The notes beneath the pieces were generated by a model, which saw only the letters and a program-made list of their open reading frames with translations, did not search any database and was not told the origin of the DNA. From the IMG/VR virus record IMGVR_UViG_3300027770_000025, positions 186,001 through 250,000 of that record: a stretch of 64,000 nt of DNA. The stretch is one strand, 5' to 3'. Each line of letters starts with the position of its first letter. Positions within the stretch are counted from its first letter, which is position 1. Position numbers and translations under genes: made by a program. Of this stretch, positions 6,156 to 53,246 are shown in pieces.

Positions 6156-6233
6156 TTTACCTTTTTCTTTTTTTTAAAATCCCATCGCTGCTATTGCTAA
6201 CAACTCTAAGGCCATTTTGACCCGGGACACTAA

Positions 6234-6256
6234 GTACGAAAGGCACCCTTTAATAC
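6234..6256 (-). repeat. Right arm of 23-nt inverted repeat (minus strand GTATTAAAGGGTGCCTTTCGTAC)
   Basis: Direct comparison with 5315-5337. Confidence 0.85.
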
Positions 6257-6279
6257 ATTCTATATATAATCACTGGTTA

Positions 6280-6741
6280 TTACCAGAAATCTTCTCCCTC
6301 TTGCCCCTTTGAGTATTCATTATAACCACCCAATGAATTATCATAGTCATCATCCTCAAATTCTGCATCGCTAAGGAATTCCCTTTCTGATTCAGAAATT
6401 CTTTCAAACCAATCCCCGTTGTCTTTATACCAAACGGTGTTTATAGCGGGTGTTCCTGCTGTCCACTCTATTTTTGAATCATTCGATAAACCTCCGGGTA
6501 TAATTGAATCTAGATCGTTGACTACTTTTTCTAAATCGTTTTGTAGATCTGTGTCTAGTTCTACATCATCAACGTATATTTCTAAATATTCATTAAAGTT
6601 AGGTTCCATACAATCAATAAAGATATTATATAAAATAATGAAATCTTCTCTTGATTCCATTAGTAATTTAATATCTAATATTTCGCTAGCTTTAAACTTG
6701 TTATTGGTTATTAGCTCTGCATTTAAAATGTAATTCTTCAT
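6280..6741 (-). CDS. Hypothetical acidic protein
   Basis: 153 aa ORF in operon orientation. Confidence 0.65.
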   Translation of the reverse strand: MKNYILNAELITNNKFKASEILDIKLLMESREDFIILYNIFIDCMEPNFNEYLEIYVDDVELDTDLQNDLEKVVNDLDSIIPGGLSNDSKIEWTAGTPAINTVWYKDNGDWFERISESEREFLSDAEFEDDDYDNSLGGYNEYSKGQEGEDFW

Positions 6742-6775
6742 TATTTTTTTAGTTGTATATACCCATAATGCTTCT

Positions 6776-7060
6776 CTATTTTATTTGGCTTCCCCTAACT
6801 TTTATAGTTTCCTCTGTTATCGGTCGAGAATAAAGACTCATTATTTTAGTTCCCTCTACATTAGTAAAAGTAATTCTACTTTTCTCGTTTGGCCTCAGTG
6901 TAATCGTAACATCACCAGGTTCTTCTGAAATGTCACTCCATGCAAAAACAATAGGATTCTCGTTATCAAATTGAAAAACCCATTCGGCATCTTTGAAATT
7001 TTCTGGTAATCCTGCTATTGTAGCGGATTCCCCCTTTAGTTCTATGTTATTATCTTCCAT
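6776..7060 (-). CDS. Hypothetical protein
   Basis: 94 aa ORF starting directly after the RNase HII stop. Confidence 0.6.
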   Translation of the reverse strand: MEDNNIELKGESATIAGLPENFKDAEWVFQFDNENPIVFAWSDISEEPGDVTITLRPNEKSRITFTNVEGTKIMSLYSRPITEETIKVRGSQIK

Positions 7061-7066
7061 GTTATT

Positions 7067-7670
7067 TTATATAAAGTTTTGACAAAATGTTTTTCTGTGA
7101 TGTTTGGATAAACCGATTTCTCTTATTGCTGAGATGTGTTCTGGTGTACCGTACCCAACATTCTTTTCCCATAGATAATGTGAAAATTCTGGGCTGATAG
7201 ATTTCATTAGCCTATCTCTATGAACTTTAGCTAAGATAGATGCTGCAGATATACATTGCACTTTAGAGTCTCCTTTTATCACACACTCATAATCTATTCC
7301 CTTATGTCCAGGAAATCTATCGCCGTCAACATAAAGGAAATCCGGAACTACGCTACAAGAATCAATAGCTCTTTTCATAGCTAAAAATGTTGCCTGTAAA
7401 ATATTGATCTGATCTATTTCCTGTGGCGATGCTGCACCTATTCCCCATGCTATTGCATTTTCTTTTATTAGTGCTTCCACATCTTCTCTTTTTTTTAAGC
7501 TCTTTATGGTTTTACTATCTCTAATTCTAGGATCTAAAAAATCATTGGGTAGAATAACTACTGCGGCAACTACTGGGCCAGAAAGGCATCCTCTTCCTTC
7601 AGCCCACCTCGTCTACACCAGCAATAAATCTTAGCTCGCGTAGAAGAGGCGGATTATTATTTTCTATCAT
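7067..7670 (-). pseudogene. rnhB: Ribonuclease HII interrupted by a 7-nt excess containing TGA at the catalytic DE motif
   Basis: ATG 7670 reads ...IAGVDEVG*; the +1 frame continues EGRGCLSGPVVAAVV...DSK...NILQAT...VDG...KGDSKVQCISAASILAKVHRD...KNVGYGT...HRKTF. Confidence 0.8.
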
Positions 7671-7689
7671 TATTTTTATTATTAATTTA

Positions 7690-7770
7690 TTAAAATCCTC
7701 TTTGACAATATGCCATTGCATTTATCTTTTCTTTTTGCAACCACTGTAAATACTTAAATAATCTTTTCAT
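7690..7770 (-). CDS. Small ORF MKRLFKYLQWLQKEKINAMAYCQRGF (26 aa)
   Basis: Hand translation; ATGA overlap with the upstream gene's stop suggests translational coupling. Confidence 0.5.
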   Translation of the reverse strand: MKRLFKYLQWLQKEKINAMAYCQRGF

Positions 7771-7952
7771 GGACTTTCTATTGGATAATTTTCATATTGA
7801 AATATTAAATCTTTAAGTAATTTGTTTTCTTGAATGACTCCTTCACATTTATTACCTTCTTGAAACACGGTCATACCTATAAAAATTCCAATAACAAACC
7901 CTATAAGTAATCCTAATCCGGCTGCTCTATATTCGGTTCTTCTATCGGACAT
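7767..7952 (-). CDS. Small membrane protein
   Basis: One Gly-rich hydrophobic helix (GLGLLIGFVIGIFIG). Confidence 0.6.
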   Translation of the reverse strand: MSDRRTEYRAAGLGLLIGFVIGIFIGMTVFQEGNKCEGVIQENKLLKDLIFQYENYPIESP

Positions 7953-14183: not shown

Positions 14184-14187
14184 CGTG

Positions 14188-14650
14188 TGGATCTGCAGGG
14201 AGTCGAACCCTGGTCTCCTTCAGTTAATACTAAGAATTCATTCACAGGCTTAGAAAGTTTTTTATAAACTTACAAACTAATCGGGTTTATGACACCAGCA
14301 AACATTTTGCTGTCTTTTAGTGACTTACAGCGTCAGTCAGAGAACTTATACTAACAGCGATCTTAAGGGTATTGATGTTATCTCAGGGTTACTGATCATA
14401 AGCTCTACTTTTTTGGTACTGTTAACCCTTTTTCCCAACGTCACATTTTTTTAAACGGAGTAAGTGAGACTCCGGAGGTTATGCAGCGTAAGCGTACTCA
14501 ACCTCAGTTACAGGAGTACCAAACGAGTTGATAGCGTCCCAAACTGATTTTTTGCCATTTATAGCTTTATATAGGTTATTAAAGTGTTTCCAATACTAAC
14601 ACTGCCTGCATTCAAAGAACTACGCCTGCGGATCAATTCCGGTCAGACCC
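14188..14650 (-). ncRNA. ssrA: tmRNA (~463 nt) with tag (A)GKKSVWDAINSFGTPVTEVEYAYAA
   Basis: 5' GGGTCTG pairs with 3' CAGATCC-A including G3:U70; T-arm CAGGG-TTCGACT-CCCTG; resume context ATAAAT-GGC; tag frame 14556..14479 ends YAYAA-stop. Confidence 0.92.
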
Positions 14651-35756: not shown

Positions 35757-37157
35757 TTATATTTTGCCTATCTTTTTTTTCAGCTGATCGATTTCATATT
35801 CTAACTCTAACATTCGGTCCTTAGTTTTACGACGTTTACCGTACAAATCCTTAATAATTATTTTAAGTATAGGATCTTCTTCATCGGAAGCAAAGCATGC
35901 CCCGGAGGCAGTTCTAATCCAATCGTCTTTGGGATTTACTGGATTTTTACCTCTATATGCTTCAGGCGAAATGTTCCACTGAACCATTGTATTTGGGTAT
36001 AGCGATGCAAAGTCATAGCAGGCTACCCATTCATGTAATCCTTTTATAGGTTCTTTAACATATCCACCCGCAAACTTGACGTGTACCTCCTCTCTTTTTT
36101 CCACGACAAATAGCTGTTTACGGTCTAAAAACTTTCTAAGCATTAATACTTCCGTCGACCAAACAGGGGAAAGGCATCGATTTATCTCCACCCCGCTAAT
36201 CATAGCGATTTTAAAGAAAGTCTGCATGGTCTTTAACTTCTGATCGATATAATGTACTAAAGCACAGTCAACTACGTTATAGTAAATAAAGTCCTCGAAG
36301 TTTGACTGGTAAAGGTCTCGGAGGGTTCCGTTATATTCAATCTTTTTAAGTCCTATTGCTTTGTCTGCTACGTAGTCCAATCTATTGCTTTCTTTAATCT
36401 TGATAACTCGGTCCCACTTCTTGTAGATTTCTAAGTAGTCAAACATTAATAGATGAACCGGAAGCTGTTGCTTCCCTATAAGGTATCCCCCAGGTGAAAT
36501 AATTTTTGGATCAATCCCAAGTTTCTTCGCTCTGTTAATAAGATAAGGCCAGTCATATCCTAGCCAGTTCCATCCTGTCATAACCGGCATTTTAGGTCCA
36601 AGTTCTTTAAAGAATGTATACATCATATCATATTCGGTCTCGAACTGTTTATATTTAAAGGACCATTCATCTCCAAACTTCTTGAAATATTCGTTGGTCT
36701 TCTTATAGATATTAGCTTGTTGCTCTGGTGTCAATGGATCTAGCCCTAAAACTATCAATTTACATTTGTCTGTTGCAATACCTATTGATAGAACACGATT
36801 TTTAGCATTCTCTGTGTCTAGTGCTGCTGCCATATCTTCGGTTATCTCGACCTCAATATCGACAAAGTATTTCTTAGGATTCTGATATACCCAAAGTGGT
36901 GCTGTTAATTCAGGATCTGCTTCGATTAGAATCTGAGCCATCCTATATTTGTCGTATTTTTGAGTTTTTAGTTTCTTTACCGAATCACCTGTCCAGGTTT
37001 TCCATTCTTTATCCTTAGCGGAATTGCTAGGACTGCACTTTTCCCAAACGAATCTTTCTGATTCCGGAATGGGTACATCTAGGAAAGCTAGGTCGCCTTC
37101 TTCTGTGAAATGTGATACTTTAAGATATTCCCCTCTGTTCTCAATGTCTACGATCAT
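35757..37157 (-). CDS. Family-B DNA polymerase, N-terminal subunit (exonuclease + motif A; gp43A-like)
   Basis: ExoI VDIEV, ExoII GWNWLGYDW, ExoIII YNVVDC, motif A YDFASLYP; ends in the fingers helix. Confidence 0.92.
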   Translation of the reverse strand: MIVDIENRGEYLKVSHFTEEGDLAFLDVPIPESERFVWEKCSPSNSAKDKEWKTWTGDSVKKLKTQKYDKYRMAQILIEADPELTAPLWVYQNPKKYFVDIEVEITEDMAAALDTENAKNRVLSIGIATDKCKLIVLGLDPLTPEQQANIYKKTNEYFKKFGDEWSFKYKQFETEYDMMYTFFKELGPKMPVMTGWNWLGYDWPYLINRAKKLGIDPKIISPGGYLIGKQQLPVHLLMFDYLEIYKKWDRVIKIKESNRLDYVADKAIGLKKIEYNGTLRDLYQSNFEDFIYYNVVDCALVHYIDQKLKTMQTFFKIAMISGVEINRCLSPVWSTEVLMLRKFLDRKQLFVVEKREEVHVKFAGGYVKEPIKGLHEWVACYDFASLYPNTMVQWNISPEAYRGKNPVNPKDDWIRTASGACFASDEEDPILKIIIKDLYGKRRKTKDRMLELEYEIDQLKKKIGKI

Positions 37158-38690: not shown

Positions 38691-39072
38691 TGGCCTTTAA
38701 ATAAGCATCCAGCTTTTTATCAGCAACCTCTATATTTAAGTTTCCGTTAATAAAGATTTCCCAAGAATCCCTGCCATATTTACCTATACCTGGCAGCTCT
38801 ATAGCATCTCTAAATCCCTCAACCCATTTCTGACTTAACTTTATTATCCGGGATGCTTTTACATTCTGAAATCCGGTTGTTTTTATGACCGCTGCCAGCC
38901 TTTCTGGATCACACCCAATAGTAGATATGGGCGTCGGGATAAGTTCAAATACGGAGCTTAAAATCGGTCTTACTTGCTTATTATTTGTTTGATTTAATAG
39001 AATACAACAAACCATCATTTTCCATGGCTCTTTCAGATAATCCTCCTGTATTAGTATCTCTCTTTCCCCCAT
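38671..39072 (-). CDS. MBD4-like HhH DNA glycosylase
   Basis: PWKMMVCCILLNQT, G....KA..IIKLS, LPGIGKYGRDSWEIF, D..L..Y. Confidence 0.85.
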   Translation of the reverse strand: MGEREILIQEDYLKEPWKMMVCCILLNQTNNKQVRPILSSVFELIPTPISTIGCDPERLAAVIKTTGFQNVKASRIIKLSQKWVEGFRDAIELPGIGKYGRDSWEIFINGNLNIEVADKKLDAYLKAINRPSN

Positions 39073-39911
39073 TATATTTGTATTCCGGGTACCCAGTGGG
39101 TCATTCTACCATCATCGGTAATCTCATGAACTACTATGTTACCTAAAGGATCCTTATCCTTACGGTAAACATGAAAGGAGAAAACAAAATCCCCGTGGTT
39201 GTTGTCCATGTCGGTGTACGTGGCTAGAGTTGCTCCCCCTTGTTCATACGATGTTTTAATTATGGTCTTTATCCATTCGCATAGCTTCTCCATTCTATCC
39301 ATCGGAATGTCGCATATTTTTAAATGTGGAGAAATGCCAGCTCTGTAAAGTGCCTCCGATTTTATATAGTTGCCTACGCCTGAGATGACCTTCTGATCCA
39401 TGATAGCTTTGCAAATGTTTTTGTTTGGTGATTTGGTTAATCTAGCATAAAATTCAGCAAAAGGAACTTCATTATTTAACATATCTGGTCCTGATGAGTT
39501 TAGCTTCTTCCTAATCTCCTCGTGATCAGAATAGAAAGAAATGTTACCAAATCTCCTTACATCCTCAAAGAAAACTTCGGAAGAGTCTGAAAATCTAAGT
39601 ACAAAATGCGAATGCTTCCCTCTAAGGTCTCTCCATCCCCCACTCATGCCCAACGTGTTCCACATAAACAGATCTCCAATTTTAGCATAGATAAATTTAC
39701 CTTTAACTCTGACCCAGTCAACCTGGAGTGGACCTGCTGATAACGCTTCCCTGATAAGTGAAATCCCGGTGGGTTCTTTCTTTAACCATTTTCCTCCGAG
39801 TATTTCAGCCTCTGTTAGTTCTTTATAAACTATTCTTTTGGCTAATCCCTCAGCCATTCTTCTTACTTCCGGTCCTTCTGGCATTTCTTTTCTTTTTGCA
39901 AATATAATCAA
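39072..39911 (-). CDS. Fpg/Nei-family DNA glycosylase (likely start MPEGPEV)
   Basis: PEGPE, KGK, LGMSG, DVRRFG, MDQ..ISGVGNYIKSEALY, zincless finger GRMTHW. Confidence 0.92.
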   Translation of the reverse strand: MIIFAKRKEMPEGPEVRRMAEGLAKRIVYKELTEAEILGGKWLKKEPTGISLIREALSAGPLQVDWVRVKGKFIYAKIGDLFMWNTLGMSGGWRDLRGKHSHFVLRFSDSSEVFFEDVRRFGNISFYSDHEEIRKKLNSSGPDMLNNEVPFAEFYARLTKSPNKNICKAIMDQKVISGVGNYIKSEALYRAGISPHLKICDIPMDRMEKLCEWIKTIIKTSYEQGGATLATYTDMDNNHGDFVFSFHVYRKDKDPLGNIVVHEITDDGRMTHWVPGIQI

Positions 39912-39977: not shown

Positions 39978-41867
39978 TTATTGCTTGATTTCTTCGTACT
40001 CTACATCTTGTAAATCTTCCGCACTATCAGAAGTTTGTTCGGAAGGGGATTCAGTTGCTTGAGCTTGCTGATCTGCTGCATATACAGCAGAAGCTATTAC
40101 ATTCATCTTATCAGAAAGAATCTTCATTGTGGATTCGATAGCATCTAAATCGTCACCGTCCATGATTTTTCTTAATTCTTCTATTTTATCAGAGATCTCT
40201 TGTTTATCTGAATCACTTACCTTGTCGCCAAAGTCGCTAATCGCTTTTTCCATCTGAAAACACATAGAAGAAGCTTCATTATAAAGCTGAGATTTTCTTA
40301 ATCTCTCCTTATCTGCCTCTGCATTTGCTTCAGCATCATTTTTCATCTTTTCAATTTCTTCATCAGTTAGCTTAGATCCTGATTCAATTCTAATATTTTG
40401 AACTTTACCTGTTCCCTGATCCTTAGCAGAAACCTTAATAATACCGTTGGCATCAATATCAAATGTAACTTCGATCTTTGGAATACCCCTCATTGAAGGC
40501 GGAATATCAGTTAACTGAAATCTGCCAAGAGATCTGTTATCTGTAGCCATTGCTCTTTCCCCTTGTAATACGTGTATCTCCACTGCTGGTTGGTTATCAA
40601 CAGCTGTAGAAAATACCTCGCTCTTTGTTACTGGTATAGTTGTGTTGGATTCGATCAATTTAGTAAATACACCACCTACTGTTTCTATTCCTAGAGAAAG
40701 AGGTGTGATGTCTAACAAAAGAACGTCTTTAATATCTCCAGCTAGCACTCCTCCTTGGATAGCAGCTCCAATAGCTACCACCTCATCAGGATTAACGCCC
40801 TTGGAAGGTTTCTTACCGAAAAGTTTTTCAACTTCTTCCTGTACCTTAGGTATCCTTGTAGATCCGCCTACTAAAATAACCTCATCAACCTGAGCAGCTG
40901 TTAAACCTGCATCTTTCAATGCTTTCTTACAAGGTTCTAATGTTCTTTTAATTAGATCCCCGCACATAGACTCGAATTGAGCTTTAGATAATTTCTTTAC
41001 GAAATGTTTAGGCCCATTTGAATCTGCACTTAAATAAGGAAGGTTAATCTCTGTCTCATTAGAAGCAGAAAGTTCAACTTTTGCTTTCTCCGCACCTTCT
41101 CTAATTCTTTGATAAGCCGTAGGGTCTTTAGAAGCATCCACACCGGTTTCATCTTTAAATGCAGCAACTACCCAATCGATAATCATTTCATCAAAGTTGT
41201 CACCACCTAAGTGGGTGTCACCGTTGGTGGAAAGAACCTCAAATACTCCAGATCCTATTTCTAGGATTGAAACGTCAAATGTACCGCCACCTAAGTCATA
41301 CACTGCAACCTTAAGATCTTTGTCACCTTTATCCAGGCCATAAGCTAAAGCTGCTGCTGTTGGTTCGTTAATAATACGGAGTACTTCTAATCCTGCAATT
41401 TCACCAGCCTCTTTAGTTGCTTGTCTTTGGCTATCGTTGAAATAAGCAGGAACTGTAATTACCGCTTGGGTAACAGCTTCTCCTAAATACTCCTCTGCAG
41501 TTCTTTTTAGATTCTGTAAAATTATTGCCGAAATTTCTTGGGGTACGTATGTTTTTCCGTTTGCTTCTACTACTACCTTATCACCCTTTTCTTTTTTTAC
41601 TTTATAAGACATTTTACCTGCCTCATTTTTAATCTCCGAATACTTAGATCCAATAAACCTTTTTACTGAATAGATAGTATTCTCTGGGTTAGTAACCGCT
41701 TGTCTCTTTGCAGAGTCTCCGATTCTAATGTCACCATCTTTAAAAGAAACCACACTAGGTGTAGTTCTTTTTCCCTCCTGGTTAACAATAACTGAGGGTG
41801 TGCTTCCTTCAATTAGGGAAACACATGAATTTGTTGTTCCTAGGTCAATACCAATTACTTTTGCCAT
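39978..41867 (-). CDS. dnaK: Chaperone DnaK (Hsp70)
   Basis: [33 protein letters not shown]. Confidence 0.98.
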
Positions 41868-43203: not shown

Positions 43204-43611
43204 TTACTTTAACTCCTCAAGATTCATCCGGCTTCCCTGACCCCAGTAATCTGCACCCCCGTAATAGGTGCAAATCTCTTCATTTTGTTCTATGTCTCTA
43301 ATTGCATAGAAGAAAAAAGTCTCCCTTGGTTCTGAACTTTTCCATGCTGCATTGGGAGAATTTGAATGATTGTAAAGTGCTCCATAACCAGTTGGTATAA
43401 CCTGTGTAACCGGAGACACAGTAGGCCACATAAATCGATAGTGTTCTAGTACATGCCAACATGATGCATTTACGTGTAGATCCAGTCCTATAACTGTGCA
43501 TTCTTCTATGATCTCACCCTTTCCTATTCTGGATTTAGCAAAAACACCATATCCGTGGATTGGGCTAGGTGAAACATAAACTTTTTCTGGTAAATAAATT
43601 TGTACTGCCAT
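43204..43611 (-). CDS. SET-domain lysine methyltransferase
   Basis: HGYGVFA..I.KGE.I, YNHSNSPNA, AIRDI...EEIC.YYG. Confidence 0.9.
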   Translation of the reverse strand: MAVQIYLPEKVYVSPSPIHGYGVFAKSRIGKGEIIEECTVIGLDLHVNASCWHVLEHYRFMWPTVSPVTQVIPTGYGALYNHSNSPNAAWKSSEPRETFFFYAIRDIEQNEEICTYYGGADYWGQGSRMNLEELK

Positions 43612-44050: not shown

Positions 44051-44098
44051 TTCTTCTGTTGATTTTTTTGTGATCTATATATCCACACAAAAAAGGAC

Positions 44099-44341
44099 TT
44101 ATAAATATAAGTCCTTTTGTTTCTTGTCCCATTCACTTTGTGTTATGGGTTTAGAGGATAAATCCCAATTCTTATCTGGATTGATAATTTTCTTTTTAGA
44201 TTTGTACCAATCATTGAAGGTCCAAATAAATCGATTATATCCCTTGCCGACTAAGGCAAATCCACTGTCCCCTGGTTGAATAGCCATTGGCGATTGAGGG
44301 GGAGCATAAAAACTTGTTTCAGGATTCTTTGTTTTTGACAT
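44099..44341 (-). CDS. Hypothetical protein
   Basis: ORF track. Confidence 0.6.
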   Translation of the reverse strand: MSKTKNPETSFYAPPQSPMAIQPGDSGFALVGKGYNRFIWTFNDWYKSKKKIINPDKNWDLSSKPITQSEWDKKQKDLYL

Positions 44342-44818: not shown

Positions 44819-45382
44819 TTATCTGCTAATTAATACAGATTTTTTTGTTGATCCCTGTTGAACCGACCAATTTTCTCCTAAATAAGAAATAATAATTGAC
44901 TTCATAAACTCAATATATTCACCCTTACCGTCAAATTCTAAATTGTCCTGTATTTCATCATATATTCTATTGGTCTTAGGATTTGATTCTAGATAGCTGC
45001 TTAAACATTTCGATGCGTATTCCATTATTCTAGAAACCTCATTTCCACCTGCTTTGAATTTCATAGTGTTAGGCTGAGGAACTTCCTCTTTCTTTACCGC
45101 TATGTCTTCTATTAATTCATGAGAAATCTCATTCAATGTAAGTACACAATATGAATTTTTAGGTCCATCTATAACTTCGTTATTAGAATATTTTCCGATT
45201 ATGAAATGAAATCCTTTTTCATCTTCACCCCTTTCATCTTCTATATCAAAGAAGTAGTTGTAAATATCCCCGTTTTTTACCAAGAGGAAAGGAGAAGTAC
45301 CGAATCCATCTGATTCATGCATAGACCTTGACTCCAGATCATTTATTTTGAATTGCTCGAATGTAGATATTATTCTTCTCAT
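44819..45382 (-). CDS. Hypothetical protein (N-term MRRIISTFEQF)
   Basis: 187 aa ORF. Confidence 0.7.
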   Translation of the reverse strand: MRRIISTFEQFKINDLESRSMHESDGFGTSPFLLVKNGDIYNYFFDIEDERGEDEKGFHFIIGKYSNNEVIDGPKNSYCVLTLNEISHELIEDIAVKKEEVPQPNTMKFKAGGNEVSRIMEYASKCLSSYLESNPKTNRIYDEIQDNLEFDGKGEYIEFMKSIIISYLGENWSVQQGSTKKSVLISR

Positions 45383-45390
45383 TTTATTTT

Positions 45391-47412
45391 TTATTTTTCT
45401 ATATTTTCTTTTAGAGATTCATTCTCAAGATCTGCGATTTCACTCTCAGTTACGATTTCCTCTGATTCTTTAATTTCCTTTCCGTTAATAGAAGAAAGTA
45501 AACTATTATAGAAAGAAGAAACACCCTGTGGTACAAGCTTTTTAAATGTTAGGAAATCTTCGTTCCCTATGGAATTTCTAATTTCTGTTCCTGTCGTTGT
45601 TCTTGGGGTTTCTACAACTTCTATTTCTTCAGAGAAATCACCGCCAGCTTTTTTAAGGTATTCCGATTGTTTCCTGTAATCATCCATCCTATCGTCGCCA
45701 GCTCCTATTAGATTAACTTTATACCCCATTTCTTTTGCTATACCATATATAACACCCAATAATCCTTTTTTAGTTGCAAAATATCCATTAATTAGTCCAG
45801 GATGATCCTTAACTACTGCTTCCATATACTTGCCAATAAGATCCTCATTGAATGGGGATTTGCCCGATTTATTATGACCTGGATTAACCACAGCAACTAT
45901 ACTAGGTAAACCGTTTTTCTCTTTAAGTAATTTTGCCATCTTTATATGACCATTATGGAAAGGCTGGAATCTGCCAACTAAAATATTAACCTCATTAAGC
46001 TCCGGTTTTTTGTCTTCCCCTTTTTCATCTAATTTAGGTTTTTCTATGTCCTTCTTAGTTGTATCTATTGTTTCCAAAGCCGAGATAAATTCATTATAAG
46101 AACAGAAGTGATCATCATCCTTAGTGCTCTCTTCAGATTCACTAGTTACGTAATCAACTTTTTTAGGCTTTAAATTATTCTTTTTAAAATCTAAAAATGA
46201 AGGCATTTCTGACTCCATTACAGCAGGTTTCTTTGTTTCAGTCTCTACCCTTTTTTCTATTGAGGATACGAGTAAATTGAATTGATCTATTATACCTGGT
46301 GTGATTATTCCACCTGCTCTCTTTTTAATCTTTCTGAATGAATTAAGAATAAGCTTAAATAGCGATTCAAAAGCTTCGTCTTCTTCCAAATACTTTAGTA
46401 CTCTTCTGTCAGTTATAAGATTCTTATTCAGTCTGAAGTCTTCTTTCTTTAAATATTCTGGCTCTTGAAAATCTGCCCCTTTGTATTTGTATCCATATTC
46501 GTCTAGGAATTTAGAGAAGACATCAGAAATAAAAGAAATGTATCTCTCATCTTCGGTAGTTCCTGCTATTTCAAAAGTATCCACACCATTTTCTAGTATG
46601 AAGTTCATCACATCCAGTATAGTAATACCTAAGAAATCGCTAGGTTTTTCCTCTGTTCTTTTCTTAGCCTTTGATTTTGCAAGCTCAGTAAAAACAGGAT
46701 CTACCATTTTAGATAAAATAGGTTCTTGCTCTTCATCTTCTTCCCCGAATCTAAATACTATTCCCTCTATTGGCTTTTCTAAATCTGCATTTAGAGCAGT
46801 CTTTTTTAATTCAGGATTAAGCACGCCAATAATAAATGCAACGAAACTTCTTGTTTTATATTCGGTTACGAGATCTTCGAAAGGTGTTCTTAAGAAATCG
46901 AGTATTCTATCTTTCTGCTCTTTTTCAAGATACCCCTGAAAAATGATAGGTGGTCTTTCTACCCCTAATAAATCTGCCCATGTATCTAGATCATTCTTAC
47001 CCTGAATTGTTCCCTTAGGTTTTCCACTTTGATCTTTCTTATGGATATAAGAAAGTATTAGATTATTCTTAGGAACTTCATCATAAACTATCTCAACCGG
47101 AGCACTATTTGCAAAGTACTCTAATCCAAATCTCCACCCCCTAGGGATTTCTTTTATTATGTGGGGAGGCAATGATTCGATATATTGTATGGGTTTTTCA
47201 TAGTACTTCATTAAAGTCCTATCTACCAGGGTTATTGGATTTCTCTGATCTCTTTTATAAAAATTAAATTTTCCTGTTTCGCTATCTCTTTCAACAATGA
47301 AAGCAGACCCGTCCATTTTCTCGTTAACGGTAACATAAGTGTTGAAAAGATTATCGATGAAATCTTTTCCCTTCTTATTATAGAGATCATATAAATGACT
47401 AATTCCTGCCAT
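45391..47412 (-). CDS. RNA-ligase-type nucleotidyltransferase fused to a C-terminal HIGH-family (NMNAT/PPAT-like) nucleotidyltransferase
   Basis: Motif I EKMDGS, III FGLEY, IV EGIVFR, V SKMVDP.F; C-term VGRFQPFHNGH, AGDDR, TTGTEIR. Confidence 0.75.
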   Translation of the reverse strand: MAGISHLYDLYNKKGKDFIDNLFNTYVTVNEKMDGSAFIVERDSETGKFNFYKRDQRNPITLVDRTLMKYYEKPIQYIESLPPHIIKEIPRGWRFGLEYFANSAPVEIVYDEVPKNNLILSYIHKKDQSGKPKGTIQGKNDLDTWADLLGVERPPIIFQGYLEKEQKDRILDFLRTPFEDLVTEYKTRSFVAFIIGVLNPELKKTALNADLEKPIEGIVFRFGEEDEEQEPILSKMVDPVFTELAKSKAKKRTEEKPSDFLGITILDVMNFILENGVDTFEIAGTTEDERYISFISDVFSKFLDEYGYKYKGADFQEPEYLKKEDFRLNKNLITDRRVLKYLEEDEAFESLFKLILNSFRKIKKRAGGIITPGIIDQFNLLVSSIEKRVETETKKPAVMESEMPSFLDFKKNNLKPKKVDYVTSESEESTKDDDHFCSYNEFISALETIDTTKKDIEKPKLDEKGEDKKPELNEVNILVGRFQPFHNGHIKMAKLLKEKNGLPSIVAVVNPGHNKSGKSPFNEDLIGKYMEAVVKDHPGLINGYFATKKGLLGVIYGIAKEMGYKVNLIGAGDDRMDDYRKQSEYLKKAGGDFSEEIEVVETPRTTTGTEIRNSIGNEDFLTFKKLVPQGVSSFYNSLLSSINGKEIKESEEIVTESEIADLENESLKENIEK

Positions 47413-47422
47413 GTTTTAAATT

Positions 47423-48355
47423 TTAACCAATTCTGTTTATTTCTGTTGGTATTTCTAGACCAGCTCTTTCAAGATATTCCAGAAATCTTTGTTTTATTTC
47501 AGGTAATCTTTCGTGTAGATCAAATTTTGGATCTTCTATTATATCTAATAAAGCCTCGAAAGTTTTAACATCCTCTAGTTTATATCCCTGACCCAATGCA
47601 AAGTTTATAAATTCTTGAGGATCTCTTGTCACAAATCTTTCGCTTCCCTCTAATTTCTTAGAGTGTTTTAATCGGGGGATTCTAATTCCTTTGTATGATT
47701 TCGTGTGCCAATATAATCCGTCACTAAGAATCAATACAGGTGCATTATAGTCCATGATTTCCCCAGTTTCATCTGTATCTATTATTTCTTTTCTAGCGGA
47801 TAGTATGGCTGATAAAAGCCAGTTTCTGTGTGCTGATTTGTATTTACTCTCGTCCACTTTATAATTGGGCGAATAGTAAATAAAATCTGCCCATTCCATG
47901 CTGGATAATGGGATAAGGTCCAATTGAACTATGCCCTTTTGTAAATCACCTTCTATTGGCCAGCCAAGGCTAACCACGTTTAATCCCTTCAGATAATTTA
48001 TTTCTGGTTCAAATCCAAGTGCTTCTGCAAGTTGTGTTCTTAGTATGGTATCAACCGTTGCCGAACATTCTTTAGCGCCTACCCCATGCTCTCGTGAAAA
48101 GAAAGTTGTATCATAGCCAAGATCAAGATCACCTGATGTGTCATCGGGATTCTTTTTCTTACCTATGCTTCCGATTATAATATATTCCTCCCCGTACTTA
48201 TCAACATCTATACCTAGAAGTGGAAAAAGAATTTCTTTGATACTATCAAGGGTTTTAGGAAATTCATCTTCACGAATTCTCCTTGAGGTTTTTATGGCAG
48301 CGCCACCCTCAAATATCTTGGAAAAGCCTGAAAAATTTAAAACAGTATTACCCAT
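47423..48355 (-). CDS. Pol-beta superfamily nucleotidyltransferase (start revised to MGNTVLNFSGF)
   Basis: IGSIG...SGDLDL and a third Asp in VQLDLI. Confidence 0.75.
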   Translation of the reverse strand: MGNTVLNFSGFSKIFEGGAAIKTSRRIREDEFPKTLDSIKEILFPLLGIDVDKYGEEYIIIGSIGKKKNPDDTSGDLDLGYDTTFFSREHGVGAKECSATVDTILRTQLAEALGFEPEINYLKGLNVVSLGWPIEGDLQKGIVQLDLIPLSSMEWADFIYYSPNYKVDESKYKSAHRNWLLSAILSARKEIIDTDETGEIMDYNAPVLILSDGLYWHTKSYKGIRIPRLKHSKKLEGSERFVTRDPQEFINFALGQGYKLEDVKTFEALLDIIEDPKFDLHERLPEIKQRFLEYLERAGLEIPTEINRIG

Positions 48356-48893
48356 TATTTTTTTGAATCTTATCATAATATCTTCCCATAGCACCACTTA
48401 AATAGCTGCTATATTGTTTCTCGTCGTCTGTTTTAGGCTTAAGCGGATCATAGTTTTTACCGAAGTAGCTTTTACCTTTAAGAGCACCTGATTTATAGAA
48501 ATCTTCAGCATCTTTCTGTGTAACGTTCTTATCCCCTATTTTTTCCTTCTCCCAATCATCCAAGACATCTTTCTCTTTAGACTTAAGATCAGCTTTAGAC
48601 ATTTTAGAATAGCTATCTTTAGAATCACCTTTAAAGAAAAAATCAGAAATAGCAGCTCCTGAGCTAGCTATCAATCTTCCGAAAAGTGGAATAATTGAAT
48701 TTATTCTATTAATCGTTGCCCTTCCTCCGTCATCCGGACCTGGATCAGTATCTCCCCTAAGCTTATCGTACTCGTATTCCATGTTTGCATCCACCTTTCT
48801 AAGCCATCTGCTTAGTTTAGTATTGCCTTTATATAAGTCGATTTCACCTTCAGTTAGCGATTCTGTAAAAGTATCAAATTTCTTTATCCTCAT
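48348..48893 (-). CDS. Hypothetical protein (N-term MRIKKFDTFTE)
   Basis: ORF; GATATATA upstream. Confidence 0.7.
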   Translation of the reverse strand: MRIKKFDTFTESLTEGEIDLYKGNTKLSRWLRKVDANMEYEYDKLRGDTDPGPDDGGRATINRINSIIPLFGRLIASSGAAISDFFFKGDSKDSYSKMSKADLKSKEKDVLDDWEKEKIGDKNVTQKDAEDFYKSGALKGKSYFGKNYDPLKPKTDDEKQYSSYLSGAMGRYYDKIQKNNG

Positions 48894-48924: not shown

Positions 48925-50463
48925 TTAAAGTTTTACCTTGTATATCTTATATTCGAAGGATTCGTTCTTATAGATCTGAATTCTTGCTTCTGAGTGTTTA
49001 AGTAGATAGTTTTGGTACTTAGGCGAAGAAAAGTCATCAACAAAGTCTATTATGTTAACTTTTTCCTTACCCTCCATCTGTCTCATTCCCCTCCCTAAAC
49101 TTTGTTTAATTAGAACCTCACTTTTATATGACTCAACCAAAAAAATGTTATGTAGGTTGTTTATTGAGATTCCCGTTGAGAATGTACCATAGGTTGCAAT
49201 AAGTATTTTATTATTTCCTGATGCCATTCTTGATTTGTATTCCTCCCTTAAACCCTCGTTTGTGTCGCCATCTACATAGAAAACCTCTTTTTCGCTATTC
49301 TTCTCCCTGAGTAGGTTCCATATCTGTTTGCCATACTCATCCTTAACAGATTGGAATAGCACCAAAGAATTCTTAGATGTTTTACTTATAAAGTCTACTA
49401 CATAATTAAGCCTTTTCTTGCTTTCAACTACAAGTTTTCTCTCCAGATTATAAACCTCATTCCCTTCTAGATTATTATTATTAAGCTTTAAATCAGCAAG
49501 TTTATCCTTATATTCTTTTTCTAACCAATCCATAACGACTATCTTGATTGAAACCGGTGTTGCATAATTATTATCGAAAAGAAAACTAGGGGATATCTCA
49601 ACTATAAGTGGACCGAGAAATTGCTGTATAGTCAAATAATCCGCCGTGCCCCTTTTAGTTAGTGTTCCAGTTAGTCCGAATCTCCACCTAGAGTGCATAC
49701 AATTTGCAACAATCTTTTTGATAGACATTGAATTTGTATGATGTGCTTCGTCAACAAAAACCAAATCAGCTTCTTCGAAGAATTCAGGATCTTGTTTAAC
49801 CAAAGACTGGAATGTACCTATAATAACATCACATCCTTCTCTTAATTTAGATCCGCCACCTATTTGTTGTATCTTAGAACCTAGCTTATGTAATCCATAA
49901 TCTTCAAAATCCTCACTACCTTGGAAAACCAAGTTTGTACTAGGAACGATCATAAGGAACTTTCTAATAAGTCCTTTCTGTCTAAGATATGCAAATATCA
50001 TAAACGAGATTAGAGTCTTGCCAGATGATGTTGCAACCTCAGAAATCGAGTATCTATATTTGATTAGCTTCCATGCTGTCTCAATCTGGTAATCCCTTGG
50101 CATCTTATTTGGATCACCGCCAATGCCGCCTTCAAAAAATTCATTAACCCATTCGGTATACTCCTCCAGGGTCAAGTCCTTACTAACTATTTTATCGAGA
50201 CCGTTTATCTCGATCTCTATTCTATAATCTTCGCCGATTTGTAAAACTTCTCTCCATAGGCCTATTGGAACTTTCCATGCGTTACCCTTCTTTTCAATAA
50301 AGCATATATTTCCATCCCAGATTTTTTTCTTAACTAAAGGATGGAAATAGAAGTTGTGTATCTTCTTGGTTAATGATATATCTATTTGTTTCTTCTCAAC
50401 CTCGTCAAGTGCTTCAGTTAGCACTATCCATTGATGGTCGTCAGAAACTTGGAATTTAATCAT
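48925..50463 (-). CDS. uvsW: UvsW-like SF2 helicase
   Basis: PRDYQ, ATSSGKT, VDEAHH, GLTGTL, TYGTFSTGISINNLH, QSLGRGMR. Confidence 0.92.
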   Translation of the reverse strand: MIKFQVSDDHQWIVLTEALDEVEKKQIDISLTKKIHNFYFHPLVKKKIWDGNICFIEKKGNAWKVPIGLWREVLQIGEDYRIEIEINGLDKIVSKDLTLEEYTEWVNEFFEGGIGGDPNKMPRDYQIETAWKLIKYRYSISEVATSSGKTLISFMIFAYLRQKGLIRKFLMIVPSTNLVFQGSEDFEDYGLHKLGSKIQQIGGGSKLREGCDVIIGTFQSLVKQDPEFFEEADLVFVDEAHHTNSMSIKKIVANCMHSRWRFGLTGTLTKRGTADYLTIQQFLGPLIVEISPSFLFDNNYATPVSIKIVVMDWLEKEYKDKLADLKLNNNNLEGNEVYNLERKLVVESKKRLNYVVDFISKTSKNSLVLFQSVKDEYGKQIWNLLREKNSEKEVFYVDGDTNEGLREEYKSRMASGNNKILIATYGTFSTGISINNLHNIFLVESYKSEVLIKQSLGRGMRQMEGKEKVNIIDFVDDFSSPKYQNYLLKHSEARIQIYKNESFEYKIYKVKL

Positions 50464-52277: not shown

Positions 52278-53246
52278 TTAAAGATCGTTATAAAGATCTT
52301 CTAGTGAAGATGAAGTTGAGCTAGTATTAGGTCTAGCTGGTGCTTCGGTTTGAGCTGGTTCTTCTCTTTTAGCTGAAGATCCAACTTTAGTCTGAGCAGC
52401 TTCAGCATAAATATCATCAGAGTGACTGTGTTCTGAGCCTTTTGCCGGGGCTGAATTAACGCCACCAATGATTTCATTAATGATACGAGCTTCTGGAACG
52501 GTGTTCTTAATAACACTCATAATCTTTTCAGTCATTTCATCGTCCCAATCTTTGTAATCAAAGCTTGTTAGATTTTTAGGACCTTCGTTTAAATATTCCA
52601 AGATAGCATTCATGTCATCTTGATTTTTATTCATTGATTTTCCATTTACTTGAATCGAACATTTCTCGCCAACGAAAGAGCATAAATCGTAGTTGTTCCA
52701 TTCTCCTACTTTTCTAACTTGGACTGCAAATAATTTACCCTCGAATAAATCAAAAGGATTTGATGGTTCGCCATACTCGGGTTGAAGCTGAGCTTCAATA
52801 AGCTCGTTTAATTTTTTACCAAATTTAAAGATCATTATCTTTCCTTCTAATTCTGGCTTATTCTTGTCCTGAACGATTTGAACTAAAGAATAGTAATCCT
52901 CTTTTCTAGAAAATTTCTTAGCAAGCTCTTGATCTGCTGCAGAATGAGAATTTTTTAATTTCCAAAAAAGATCTTTAAGAATTGATCTTTTTCCTACTGT
53001 GGAAGGACAATCAGCAGAAAATGCATTACCACTAATAGGATCGTTTAGGTAAACGTAGTACTTGTGGATTTTTGATTTTGCTGGATTAGCTGGATTAGGT
53101 ACGAATCTCATTAAAGATTTATAAACTCCGTCTTTTCCATCCTCCGGATACGGTTTGTAAAATTCAAGGTCTTTTCCTGCTCCTTGTTTAGCAGTTGGGG
53201 TTACGAACGCTTCTGCGTCCAGGTTGAAGATGTCTAAATTGCTCAT
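52278..53246 (-). CDS. Single-stranded DNA-binding protein (T4 gp32-like)
   Basis: FYKP, MRFVP, VQIVQD...EGKIMIFKFGKK, NPFDLFEG, NYD; acidic tail LEDLYNDL. Confidence 0.9.
   Translation of the reverse strand: MSNLDIFNLDAEAFVTPTAKQGAGKDLEFYKPYPEDGKDGVYKSLMRFVPNPANPAKSKIHKYYVYLNDPISGNAFSADCPSTVGKRSILKDLFWKLKNSHSAADQELAKKFSRKEDYYSLVQIVQDKNKPELEGKIMIFKFGKKLNELIEAQLQPEYGEPSNPFDLFEGKLFAVQVRKVGEWNNYDLCSFVGEKCSIQVNGKSMNKNQDDMNAILEYLNEGPKNLTSFDYKDWDDEMTEKIMSVIKNTVPEARIINEIIGGVNSAPAKGSEHSHSDDIYAEAAQTKVGSSAKREEPAQTEAPARPNTSSTSSSLEDLYNDL

What the first reader, a model, noticed from the sequence alone, without database searches (positions are those of the whole stretch)
45391..48355. Two-gene module with three nucleotidyl-transfer active sites: candidate RNA-repair/counter-defence system
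Seen: gene 1 is a Pol-beta-type NTase (GS...DLD...D). Gene 2 has RNA-ligase motifs I, III, IV and V (EKMDG, FGLEY, EGIVFR, SKMVDP), a helical linker, and a HIGH NTase (GRFQPFHNGH). The genes are 10 nt apart. Gene 1 starts with the targeting-like motif, and gene 2 has similar words internally (PSFLDF, SYNEFISALE). Known: phages repair tRNAs cut by anticodon nucleases using ligases, and restore 3' ends using Pol-beta-type CCA enzymes. A ligase-HIGH fusion is not a standard Pnk/Rnl arrangement. Inference: it may re-ligate and re-tail tRNA or tmRNA (the phage tmRNA lacks CCA). Alternatively the HIGH domain may regenerate NAD+ or make a nucleotide signal or cap used by the ligase.
Basis: partly seen in the sequence, partly recalled or inferred. 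Interest (0 to 1): 0.78.

Follow-up and report, generated by a model that had tools for sequence, protein, structure and literature searches.

The report
Phage fill-and-seal nucleic-acid repair module
Two adjacent genes of a large freshwater phage encode a small Pol X-like polymerase and a T4 Rnl2-like ligase fused to an NMN-adenylyltransferase-like enzyme, and these three enzymes sit together or are fused in many other phages, which points to an uncharacterised break-repair pathway for RNA or DNA.

Summary
On the minus strand, gene 1 (47423-48355, 310 aa) and gene 2 (45391-47412, 673 aa) are 10 nt apart.

- **Gene 1.** It folds confidently (pLDDT 94) as a minimal family-X polymerase, palm plus thumb, like ASFV Pol X. 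It is not CCA-enzyme-like. The carboxylates D76, D78 and D146 are conserved.
- **Gene 2.** It has four parts: a T4 Rnl2-type ligase domain with helical C-domain (Foldseek E 1e-6; K32, E98, E216 and K235 conserved), a disordered linker, and an NMNAT-type HIGH domain (Z 15).

The link between the genes goes beyond synteny. Gene-1-like domains are fused to HIGH domains, to RNA_ligase domains or to DUF6267 in many uncultured phages. Distant phages carry the three as separate neighbouring genes, and Stenotrophomonas phage Mendera has a similar-looking operon.

My best reading is a fill-and-seal repair module. The substrate (RNA or DNA) and the role of the HIGH domain are unresolved. The tmRNA/CCA re-tailing idea and the "targeting motif" idea are not supported. 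This is a new variant of the known ligase-plus-Pol-beta-nucleotidyltransferase repair theme, with an undescribed NMNAT-like partner.

The parts
47423..48355 (-). Gene 1, 310 aa: minimal family-X-like (Pol-beta-superfamily) nucleotidyltransferase. It belongs to an unnamed viral family with 496 representative clusters.
   Evidence: ORF. Homologues are 310 aa. 496 representatives with E<=1e-3. No Pfam, PHROG, NCBIfam or PDB sequence hit for the protein itself.
47558..48292 (-). Gene 1 residues 22-266: palm plus thumb core with catalytic D76, D78 and D146, and the motifs GSxGKK..SGDLDL and VQLDLIP.
   Evidence: AF2 pLDDT 94, pTM 0.87. VIA Z 9.5-9.9 to Pol beta 142-335 and to the whole of ASFV Pol X. 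Foldseek top hits are Pol lambda, beta, mu and TdT. Conserved columns.
48308..48355 (-). Gene 1 residues 1-16: flexible N-terminal tail carrying the FxxF-type motif (MGNTVLNFSGFSKIF).
   Evidence: pLDDT below 50 for residues 5-16. The motif recurs at other N-termini in the window.
46648..47412 (-). Gene 2 residues 1-255: Rnl2-type ligase nucleotidyltransferase domain. Motif I is EK32MDG, motif III is FGLE98Y, motif IV is E216GIVFR and motif V is SK235MVDP.
   Evidence: Pfam RNA_ligase in 18 of 22 homologues, best E 2.7e-7. Foldseek hits to T4 Rnl2, Trl1-LIG and Pab1020. Atlas features. Motif conservation.
46213..46647 (-). Gene 2 residues 256-400: helical domain after the ligase core. It is kept in stand-alone homologues and may correspond to the C-domain of Rnl2.
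   Evidence: Secondary structure. 358-389 columns aligned to full-length Rnl2 of 317-319 aa. The helix HMM hits L001 and L083-L085.
46009..46212 (-). Gene 2 residues 401-468: disordered acidic linker with two conserved short motifs, PSFLDFKK and YSYNEFISALETID.
   Evidence: pLDDT below 50 for residues 383-468. Conservation.
45478..46008 (-). Gene 2 residues 469-645: NMNAT-type HIGH nucleotidyltransferase (GRFQPFH486NGH489; TGTEIR612).
   Evidence: Pfam CTP_transf_like above its cut-off. Profile against PDB: 1f9a 1.6e-11, NadM 3.6e-9, PPAT 3e-7. Z 13-15.5. TMt 0.75 to 1f9a.
44819..45382 (-). Downstream 187-aa protein of unknown fold. It starts 8 nt after gene 2 and is fused in frame to gene 2 in three lineages.
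   Evidence: ORFs of 855, 867 and 871 aa in L030, L051 and L062. P0119 is 855 aa and seen in several sources. No homology leads.
48348..48893 (-). Upstream 181-aa protein of unknown function. It overlaps the gene 1 start by 8 nt and is syntenic in most relatives.
48925..50463 (-). ResIII/DEAD-type helicase (context). Similar helicases lie near fused relatives in other phages.
   Evidence: Pfam. Contexts of P0365 and P0291. L001 synteny.

Best explanation
This is a conserved three-enzyme fill-and-seal module that repairs breaks in base-paired nucleic acid.

1. Gene 1, a minimal Pol X-like nucleotidyltransferase, extends a 3'-OH end at a gap or a damaged end.
2. The N-terminal part of gene 2 works as an ATP-dependent Rnl2-type ligase. 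Lys32 is adenylylated, AMP passes to the 5'-phosphate, and the 3'-OH attacks to seal the nick.
3. The C-terminal NMNAT-type HIGH domain is coupled functionally to the Pol X-like enzyme. It joins AMP to a phosphorylated acceptor, either NMN to give NAD+ or a related nucleotide or end.

I judge broken structured RNA (tRNA-like stems cut by host nucleases) somewhat more likely as the substrate than phage DNA.

Shown: the folds, the conserved catalytic residues, and the linkage of the three parts. Inferred: the activities, the substrate and the order of steps.
For: **Folds and catalytic residues:** (Pol X-like; D76, D78 and D146 conserved in at least 90% of 62 homologues). (Rnl2-type; K32, E98, E216 and K235 conserved in every homologue of 48% identity or more). 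(NMNAT-type, both signature motifs present).

**Linkage:**
- The genes are adjacent in 72 of 80 IMG/VR loci.
- Gene-1-like domains are fused to the gene-2-type HIGH domain (P0258, P0291, P0299, P0340, P0344; HMM E as low as 1e-28) and to a second HIGH type (P0288, P0290, P0320, P0317, P0301).
- They are also fused to Pfam RNA_ligase (P0365 9.5e-11, P0324, P0382) and to DUF6267, which carries KIDG, EGF and VKIVDR motifs. P0288, P0290, P0320 and P0376 carry all three in one chain.
- The distant locus L098 has, as separate neighbouring genes, a gene 1 homologue, a gene-2-type ligase (HMM 3.5e-15) and a HIGH gene (5.6e-19).
- Mendera and BUDD carry a gene-1-like gene (hhalign 94%, E 1e-7), a KxDG protein related to the ligase part of P0382 and a HIGH gene.
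- The one lineage without gene 1 whose HIGH motifs have decayed (L069-L071) keeps its ligase motifs.

**RNA leaning:** every top ligase match is an RNA ligase. P0335 joins HIGH, a CCA-adding enzyme, a PNK-like kinase, HD and a gene-1-like domain. The known precedent is RlaP plus RNA ligases (PMC7824862; preprint 10.64898/2025.12.29.696909).

**Expression:** fragments occur in freshwater RNA libraries, and one contig bridges the gene 1/gene 2 junction.
Against: - No activity has been tested.
- The structural relatives of gene 1 are DNA polymerases.
- The neighbourhood is replicative or DNA-repair: gp32, helicase, PolB and Fpg/Nei. gp32 or a helicase also lies next to relatives. PD-(D/E)XK-like nuclease domains are a further partner.
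- Distant homologues of the ligase domain lack the motif I lysine: ENLDGS in LR756500.1 and E[DN][VI]QGSK in LR756501, LR756502 and LR756504. The fold therefore need not always ligate.
- Motif V has one lysine, not two.
- Adjacency within the clade could be plain synteny, because the whole block is conserved.
- Gene 2 occurs without a nearby gene 1 in L039, L062 and L001. Gene 1 occurs alone in Lak phages.
- Nothing explains why repair would need an NMNAT-like enzyme.
- The RNA-library fragments are low-depth and could be carried-over DNA.
Confidence: 0.45

Rival explanations
1. A DNA gap or break repair module of the replication region. The Pol X-like enzyme fills short gaps, for example after Fpg/Nei excision or at Okazaki junctions, possibly with ribonucleotides. 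The Rnl2-type ligase, which prefers a 3'-ribo end, seals the nick. This would be a viral counterpart of ASFV Pol X plus ligase, or of LigD-type ribo-patch end joining.
For: - The best folds for gene 1 are Pol beta, Pol lambda, TdT and the whole of ASFV Pol X.
- Context: gp32 at 52278-53246, helicase at 48925-50463, PolB at 35757-37157, Fpg/Nei at 39072-39911.
- P0288 lies directly beside gp32. P0291 and P0365 lie near ResIII helicases, dUTPase, TK and RNR.
- PD-(D/E)XK-like partners.
- In LR756504 a canonical DNA ligase sits beside the lysine-less homologue.
- DraRnl-type ligases seal duplex nicks whose 3'-OH strand is RNA (PMC1807946).
Against: - The ligase has no OB domain, and every close structural match is an RNA ligase.
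- The P0335 fusion looks like tRNA repair.
- There is no 8-kDa lyase domain, 3'-phosphatase or AP endonuclease in the block.
- Most genes in this window are on one strand and tightly packed, so neighbourhood is weak evidence.
Confidence: 0.3
2. A composite counter-defence cluster without a shared substrate. The HIGH domain is a true NMNAT that rebuilds NAD+ against NAD-depleting defences. The ligase and the Pol X-like enzyme act separately. The fusions reflect the habit of phages of joining unrelated anti-defence enzymes into polyvalent proteins.
For: - The HIGH domain is closest in sequence to archaeal NMNAT and NadM.
- P0243 carries a Nudix domain, as NadM does.
- Phage NadM/NadR salvage is known (PMC7824862, PMC9503650). 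Polyvalent proteins are common in phages (PMC5512222).
Against: - The same partners recur in many different orders and as neighbouring genes.
- The HIGH domain falls far below every NMNAT equivalog cut-off (19-25 bits against 127-181).
- PPAT and NadD match the fold about as well.
- No NadV-like gene turned up in the window or the loci whose genes were examined. I did not search for one specifically.
- HIGH motif decay coincides with the loss of gene 1.
Confidence: 0.15
3. The ligase-like domain is a non-catalytic nucleic-acid-binding scaffold. The real chemistry is done only by the Pol X-like and HIGH enzymes.
For: Motif I, III, IV and V residues are replaced in LR756500 to LR756504 homologues that are otherwise well conserved. 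The fusions found most often are gene-1-like plus HIGH.
Against: In the window's clade all four motif residues are kept down to 48% identity. They are kept even in L069-L071, where the HIGH motifs have decayed.
Confidence: 0.1

Closest known systems
T4 RNA ligase 2 (Rnl2; Pfam PF09414) and the kinetoplastid editing pair of TUTase plus REL ligase
   Same: A nucleotidyltransferase domain with motifs I, III, IV and V, followed by a helical C-domain. Best Foldseek match E 1.2e-6 over 358-389 columns. As in RNA editing, the ligase is partnered with a Pol-beta-superfamily NTase.
   Different: About 12% identity. The window protein scores below the Pfam cut-off (19 bits against 27). Motif V has a single lysine. 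It is fused through a disordered linker to a HIGH NTase, which no characterised Rnl has. Distant homologues lack the catalytic lysine.
[quoted passage not shown]
   Same: A Pol-beta-superfamily NTase encoded next to, or fused with, an ATP-dependent RNA ligase. RlaP adds 1-2 NMP to damaged RNA 3' ends (preprint 10.64898/2025.12.29.696909; PMC7824862).
   Different: No PF10127 match in gene 1 or in 62 relatives. The fold is Pol X-like with a thumb. The usual third partner here is a HIGH NTase, which is not mentioned in the RlaP preprint abstract or the two phage surveys I could text-search.
ASFV Pol X with viral ligase (base-excision repair) and other family-X polymerases
   Same: A palm plus thumb core without the 8-kDa domain. 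165 of 174 ASFV Pol X residues align at 3.4 A, Z 9.8. It is paired with a nick-sealing ligase.
   Different: 10-15% identity. An extra N-terminal tail and a C-terminal helical part are present. The partner is an RNA-type ligase, not a DNA ligase. Template dependence and sugar choice are unknown.
Archaeal-type NMNAT, NadM and the phage NAD+ salvage adenylyltransferases
   Same: GRFQPFHxGH and SGTxxR motifs followed by hVPxxV. E 1.6e-11 to 1f9a, Z 14.9, 20% identity.
   Different: Far below the equivalog cut-offs. The middle of the domain, which in NMNAT includes the NMN-binding residues (from memory), does not align by sequence. It is fused to a ligase or to a Pol X-like domain, not only to Nudix or a kinase.

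Membership tests
Rnl2-type ATP-dependent RNA ligase (covalent nucleotidyltransferase superfamily, PF09414) | Motif I KxDG with the lysine nucleophile | tested here: met
   EK32MDG. K32 is present in every homologue of 48% identity or more. The IMG/VR loci were found with a pattern that contains this lysine, so that set is biased. The lysine is absent in LR756500 to LR756504 homologues.
Rnl2-type ATP-dependent RNA ligase (covalent nucleotidyltransferase superfamily, PF09414) | Motifs III, IV and V (Glu; EG..K/R; KxK) | tested here: inconclusive
   E98, E216-G217..R221 and K235 are conserved. The second lysine of motif V is Val237.
Rnl2-type ATP-dependent RNA ligase (covalent nucleotidyltransferase superfamily, PF09414) | Ligase nucleotidyltransferase fold plus helical C-domain | tested here: met
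   Foldseek: 2hvq and 2hvr at E 1.2e-6; 1s68 with TMt 0.58; Trl1-LIG and Pab1020 also match. N-domain pLDDT is about 70-90.
Rnl2-type ATP-dependent RNA ligase (covalent nucleotidyltransferase superfamily, PF09414) | Pfam gathering score | tested here: inconclusive
   The window domain scores 19 bits, below the cut-off of 27. 18 of 22 homologues match, best E 2.7e-7.
Rnl2-type ATP-dependent RNA ligase (covalent nucleotidyltransferase superfamily, PF09414) | Ligase-AMP formation and 3'-OH/5'-PO4 sealing | not testable with these tools
   This needs biochemistry.
Family X DNA polymerase | Three palm carboxylates on the Pol-beta NTase fold | tested here: met
   D76, D78 and D146 are at least 90% conserved in 62 sequences.
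Family X DNA polymerase | Palm plus thumb architecture | tested here: met
   Z 9.5-9.9. Model residues 22-266 align to Pol beta 142-335 and to the whole of ASFV Pol X. All 50 top entries are family X.
Family X DNA polymerase | 8-kDa lyase and helix-hairpin-helix fingers domains | tested here: not met
   In almost all of the top alignments nothing matches Pol beta residues before about 142. ASFV Pol X lacks these domains too.
Family X DNA polymerase | Sequence-family match (PF14792) | tested here: not met
   No hit for gene 1. Only 5 of 62 relatives give weak hits, best E 0.009.
RlaP (PF10127) | Match to the family model | tested here: not met
   No PF10127 hit at E<=0.1 in gene 1 or in 62 relatives.
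RlaP (PF10127) | Gene linkage to an RNA ligase | tested here: met
   Adjacent to the ligase gene. Relatives are fused to PF09414 domains.
Archaeal/NadM-type NMN adenylyltransferase | (H/T)xGH and SxTxxR motifs on a HIGH Rossmann fold | tested here: met
   H486-N-G-H489 and T607-G-T-E-I-R612. Z 14.9 to 1f9a.
Archaeal/NadM-type NMN adenylyltransferase | Equivalog-level sequence score | tested here: not met
   19-25 bits against cut-offs of 127-181.
Archaeal/NadM-type NMN adenylyltransferase | NMN-specific binding residues and activity | not tested
   The middle of the domain does not align by sequence. PPAT and NadD match the fold almost equally well.
   No Pfam hit. Class I CCA enzymes rank below the Pol X entries, with TM 0.22-0.24.

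The most novel reading that the evidence does not exclude
The NMNAT-like domain does not make NAD+. It adenylylates the 5'-phosphate of a broken polynucleotide. That end is chemically a nucleoside 5'-phosphate, like NMN, so the product would be the A(5')pp(5')N intermediate made directly from ATP. The ligase fold would then only need to carry out the sealing step. This would explain why the LR756500.1 homologue keeps the HIGH domain although its ligase lysine is gone. It would also explain why HIGH domains travel with the Pol X-like end-extending enzyme.
Probability: 0.12. Interest if true: 0.85.

Novelty: new variant of a known kind. Interest (0 to 1): 0.66.

Why it matters
Repair systems that pair a ligase with a Pol-beta-type nucleotidyltransferase are known. 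Here the polymerase-like partner belongs to a large viral family with no name: 496 representative clusters and no Pfam model. It has a Pol X architecture. A third, NMNAT-like adenylyltransferase is tied to it repeatedly by fusion and by neighbourhood.

If the three act together, one of two things follows. Either nucleotide-cofactor chemistry is linked to polynucleotide repair, or there is a new route to adenylylated ends. The uncharacterised Pfam family DUF6267 would also gain a likely role as a ligase-type module.

The module appears to be present in cultivable Stenotrophomonas and Xanthomonas phages as well, so it could be tested by genetics and biochemistry.

Tried and rejected
- **PDB sequence searches.** Single-sequence and profile searches found no ligase for the N-domain and nothing for gene 1. 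Only fold comparison settled these two.
- **hhalign of the gene 2 N-domain against DUF6267** was not significant (E 0.12). The resemblance rests on motifs only.
- **The LR756500.1 421-aa EKLDG protein against DUF6267** was not significant, and it has no Pfam hit.
- **Mendera_050 against the gene 2 N-domain** was not significant, and it has no Pfam hit. Its ligase-like status rests on its motifs, a marginal BLAST hit to P0382 (4e-4), and its homologue BUDD_286, which matches P0382 at 7.6e-12.
- **A search for a canonical DNA ligase** on the window's own contig gave nothing useful.
- **No paralogues** of the three domains occur elsewhere in the window.
- **The downstream 187-aa and upstream 181-aa proteins** gave no leads.
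- **Promoter and terminator scans** gave no operon boundaries beyond one palindromic hairpin.
- **Literature.** No paper mentions DUF6267. Text searches of two phage surveys, on jumbo phages and on viral NAD+ systems, found no ligase-NMNAT fusion. I could not open the 2016 survey of RNA repair systems by Burroughs and Aravind.
- **Plain synteny with no functional link** was rejected because of the fusions and the rearranged neighbourhoods in distant phages.


Full report
**Anatomy**

Nearly all genes here are on the minus strand. Gene 1 is 47423-48355 (310 aa) and gene 2 is 45391-47412 (673 aa). They are separated by TAA-aatttaaaac-ATG, a gap of 10 nt. An upstream 181-aa ORF overlaps the gene 1 start by 8 nt, and a downstream 187-aa ORF begins 8 nt after gene 2. 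No minus-strand terminator-like site lies between 43500 and 51500, apart from a palindromic hairpin at 44091-44118. The window matches a 348.6-kb IMG/VR contig at 100% identity. It comes from a freshwater phage that is present in many lake metagenomes.

**Gene 2**

By sequence, only the C-terminal HIGH domain is clear. Pfam CTP_transf_like scores 24.8 bits against a cut-off of 21, and PHROG calls it a cytidyltransferase. A profile of the domain family hits archaeal NMNAT 1f9a at 1.6e-11, NadM at 3.6e-9 and PPAT from 3e-7. Both signature motifs, GRFQPFHNGH and TGTEIR, align.

For the window protein the N-domain is only a weak RNA_ligase match (E 0.015 as part of the whole protein, 0.0017 alone). 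Across the family, 18 of 22 homologues match, best E 2.7e-7. Language-model features also point to RNA_ligase clusters.

The AlphaFold model has these parts:
- an alpha/beta domain, residues 1-255
- a helical domain, 256-400
- a disordered linker, 383-468
- a well-modelled Rossmann domain, 470-645

Foldseek puts full-length T4 Rnl2 first (E 1.2e-6, 358-389 columns). The Rnl2 adenylyltransferase domain, fungal Trl1 ligase domains and archaeal RNA ligases follow. For the C-terminal part it finds NMNAT, NadD and PPAT (TMt 0.75 for 1f9a). VIA-align gives Z 13-15.5 for residues 471-645.

K32, E98, E216-G217 and K235 are kept in every homologue down to 48% identity.

**Gene 1**

Gene 1 has no match in Pfam, PHROGs, NCBIfam or PDB sequences. 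An exhaustive search found 496 representative clusters. The conserved columns are EGGNA, GSxGKK..SGDIDI, VQVDLM and SP..ESKYKxxxRN. A few members hit DNA_pol_B_palm, Polbeta or NTP_transf_2 weakly.

The model is confident (pLDDT 94, pTM 0.87). Residues 1-16 are disordered. Foldseek and VIA-align both put family-X polymerases first, with Z 9.5-9.9. Model residues 22-266 cover the Pol beta palm and thumb (142-335) and the whole of ASFV Pol X, with 165 residues aligned at 3.4 A. Class I CCA enzymes, cGAS and TUTases rank lower.

**Is the pair a module?**

Within the clade, gene 1 sits immediately upstream of gene 2 in 72 of 80 IMG/VR loci. The whole block from the helicase to six genes downstream is syntenic too, so this adjacency alone is weak evidence. 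Exceptions exist. Gene 2 occurs without a nearby gene 1 in L039, L062, L069-L071, L075 and LR756500.1. Gene 1 occurs alone in Prevotella Lak phages.

The stronger evidence comes from more distant relatives. Among 32 long representatives of the gene 1 family:
- 8 carry Pfam CTP_transf_like, 5 carry DUF6267 and 2 carry RNA_ligase at E<=0.001; a looser scan (E<=0.05) adds a weak RNA_ligase hit in P0382.
- HMMs built from gene 2 find its own HIGH subtype fused to gene-1-like domains in P0258, P0291, P0299, P0340 and P0344.
- A second HIGH subtype is fused in P0288, P0290, P0320, P0317 and P0301.
- P0288, P0290, P0320 and P0376 hold HIGH, a gene-1-like domain and DUF6267 in one chain. DUF6267 carries KIDG, EGF and VKIVDR motifs that read like ligase motifs I, IV and V.
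- P0365, P0324 and P0382 join a gene-1-like domain to PF09414.

Neighbourhoods agree. In locus L098, whose gene 1 homologue is 30% identical, the order is gene 1 homologue, a 342-aa gene, a 350-aa ligase of the gene 2 type (HMM 3.5e-15), a 79-aa gene, and a HIGH gene (5.6e-19). L101 and L102 read HIGH, a 355-aa gene, then the gene 1 homologue.

Cultured T4-like phages carry it too. Stenotrophomonas phage Mendera has gene 048 (gene-1-like, hhalign 94%, E 1.3e-7), 049, 050 (a KMDG protein homologous to BUDD_286; BUDD_286 matches the ligase part of P0382 at BLAST 7.6e-12, and 050 itself only marginally at 4e-4) and 051 (HIGH). BUDD has the same layout, and Moby and Marzo carry the same HIGH gene at the matching place.

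One lineage, L069-L071, has lost gene 1, and its HIGH motifs have decayed (GKFQPFDNLDL). Its ligase motifs are intact. This fits the fusion data, in which the tightest coupling is between the Pol X-like and HIGH enzymes.

Gene 2 is also fused in frame to the downstream 187-aa protein in three lineages (L030, L051, L062).

**What it does**

All three parts keep their catalytic residues, so I read them as active enzymes. One extends a 3' end, one seals a 3'-OH/5'-phosphate nick through a lysyl-AMP intermediate, and one joins AMP to a phosphorylated acceptor. This matches the general make-up described for phage and bacterial RNA repair systems: a ligase plus nucleotidyltransferases plus end-modifying enzymes (PMC7824862). 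RlaP, the known ligase-associated Pol-beta enzyme, adds one or two nucleotides to damaged RNA 3' ends (preprint 10.64898/2025.12.29.696909).

Evidence that leans towards RNA:
- The ligase fold matches RNA ligases.
- P0335 strings together HIGH, a CCA-adding enzyme, a PNK-like kinase, HD and a gene-1-like domain.

Evidence that leans towards DNA:
- Gene 1 has a Pol X architecture.
- gp32, a helicase, PolB and an Fpg/Nei glycosylase lie in the window.
- gp32 or helicases lie beside fused relatives.
- PD-(D/E)XK-like nuclease domains are partners.

A ribonucleotide-patch repair of DNA would reconcile the two. Rnl5-type ligases seal nicks whose 3' strand is RNA (PMC1807946).

The role of the HIGH domain is the real unknown. 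Its sequence is nearest to NMNAT and NadM, but it falls far below equivalog scores, and PPAT and NadD fit the fold about as well.

Distant stand-alone homologues of the ligase part (446-457 aa, in 636-735-kb phages), and the full-length homologue fused to a HIGH domain in the 462-kb phage LR756500.1, lack the motif I lysine and other motif residues. The fold can therefore persist without ligase chemistry. The lysine-less LR756500.1 homologue still carries the HIGH domain. That is what prompts the speculative reading in which the HIGH domain adenylylates 5'-phosphate ends directly.

**Expression**

Contigs from four freshwater metatranscriptome libraries cover parts of all four genes at low depth. 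One contig bridges the gene 1/gene 2 junction and another bridges the upstream ORF/gene 1 junction. Carried-over DNA is not excluded.

**Verdict**

The module is a new variant of the ligase-plus-nucleotidyltransferase repair theme. It has an unnamed Pol X-like family and an NMNAT-like third partner that the literature I could search does not describe.

Noticed in passing
window, N-termini of about 10 of 74 minus-strand genes (e.g. 45382, 48893, 43192, 31658, 16065, 311): Many proteins begin with M-[KRE]-x-[IL]-x-x-[FY]-[ED]-x-[FY], for example MRRIISTFEQF, MRIKKFDTFTE, MKYLLEYEKY and MERIKTFEDF. The same kind of start appears in LR756500 to LR756504 phage proteins. In gene 1 this stretch is a disordered tail. 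In the gene 1 family the following EGGNA belongs to the domain and also occurs internally in fusion proteins.
   Followed up: partly
window 46009-46212 (gene 2 residues 401-468): Two short motifs, PSFLDFKK and (H/D)FYSYNEFISALETID, are conserved inside an otherwise variable, disordered, acidic linker. From memory they resemble the hydrophobic peptides that bind sliding clamps or other hub proteins in T4-like phages. I did not test this.
   Followed up: no
window 44819-45382; L030, L051 and L062 at 6001 to about 8600: The downstream 187-aa protein of unknown fold is fused in frame to gene 2 in three separate lineages (855-871 aa). It is probably a fourth member of the module.
   Followed up: partly
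L083 4932-6272, L084 4962-6323, L085 4959-6260, L001 6001-7962: Homologues of the ligase plus helical part in 460-735-kb phages lack the motif I lysine (EDVQGSK, EDIQGSK, ENIQGSK, ENLDGS) and other motif residues. In L085 a canonical ATP-dependent DNA ligase lies next door on the opposite strand. In L083 a different Pol-beta NTase does. In L001 a 421-aa EKLDG protein lies directly upstream.
   Followed up: partly
L069-L071 (IMG/VR), gene at 6001-7893: The HIGH motifs have decayed (GKFQPFDNLDL, SGTxxR lost) in the one lineage that also lacks gene 1. The ligase motifs are intact there.
   Followed up: partly
P0335 (1636 aa; loci L090 and L091): A single phage protein joins a HIGH NTase, a CCA-adding enzyme head and RNA-binding domain, DUF5661, a PNK-like P-loop kinase, an HD domain and a gene-1-like domain. 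It looks like an all-in-one RNA end-repair protein.
   Followed up: partly
L086 2387-5504 (Stenotrophomonas phage Mendera genes 048-051) and L087 (Xanthomonas phage BUDD): Cultured T4-like phages carry an operon of a gene-1-like NTase, a possible PD-(D/E)XK protein, a KxDG ligase-like protein and a HIGH NTase. All but the last are annotated as hypothetical.
   Followed up: partly
window 39072-39911, 43204-43611, 39978-41867, 35757-37157: The window also encodes an Fpg/Nei-type DNA glycosylase, a probable small SET-domain protein (read from its sequence only), an Hsp70 (DnaK-like) and what looks like the N-terminal piece of a split family-B DNA polymerase.
   Followed up: partly
window 14187-14650 (minus strand): A tmRNA gene with tag peptide EVEYAYAA.
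   Followed up: partly
window 44091-44118: A 12-bp perfect palindromic hairpin flanked by A and T runs lies between two small genes. It is the only terminator-like element usable on the coding strand near the module.
   Followed up: no
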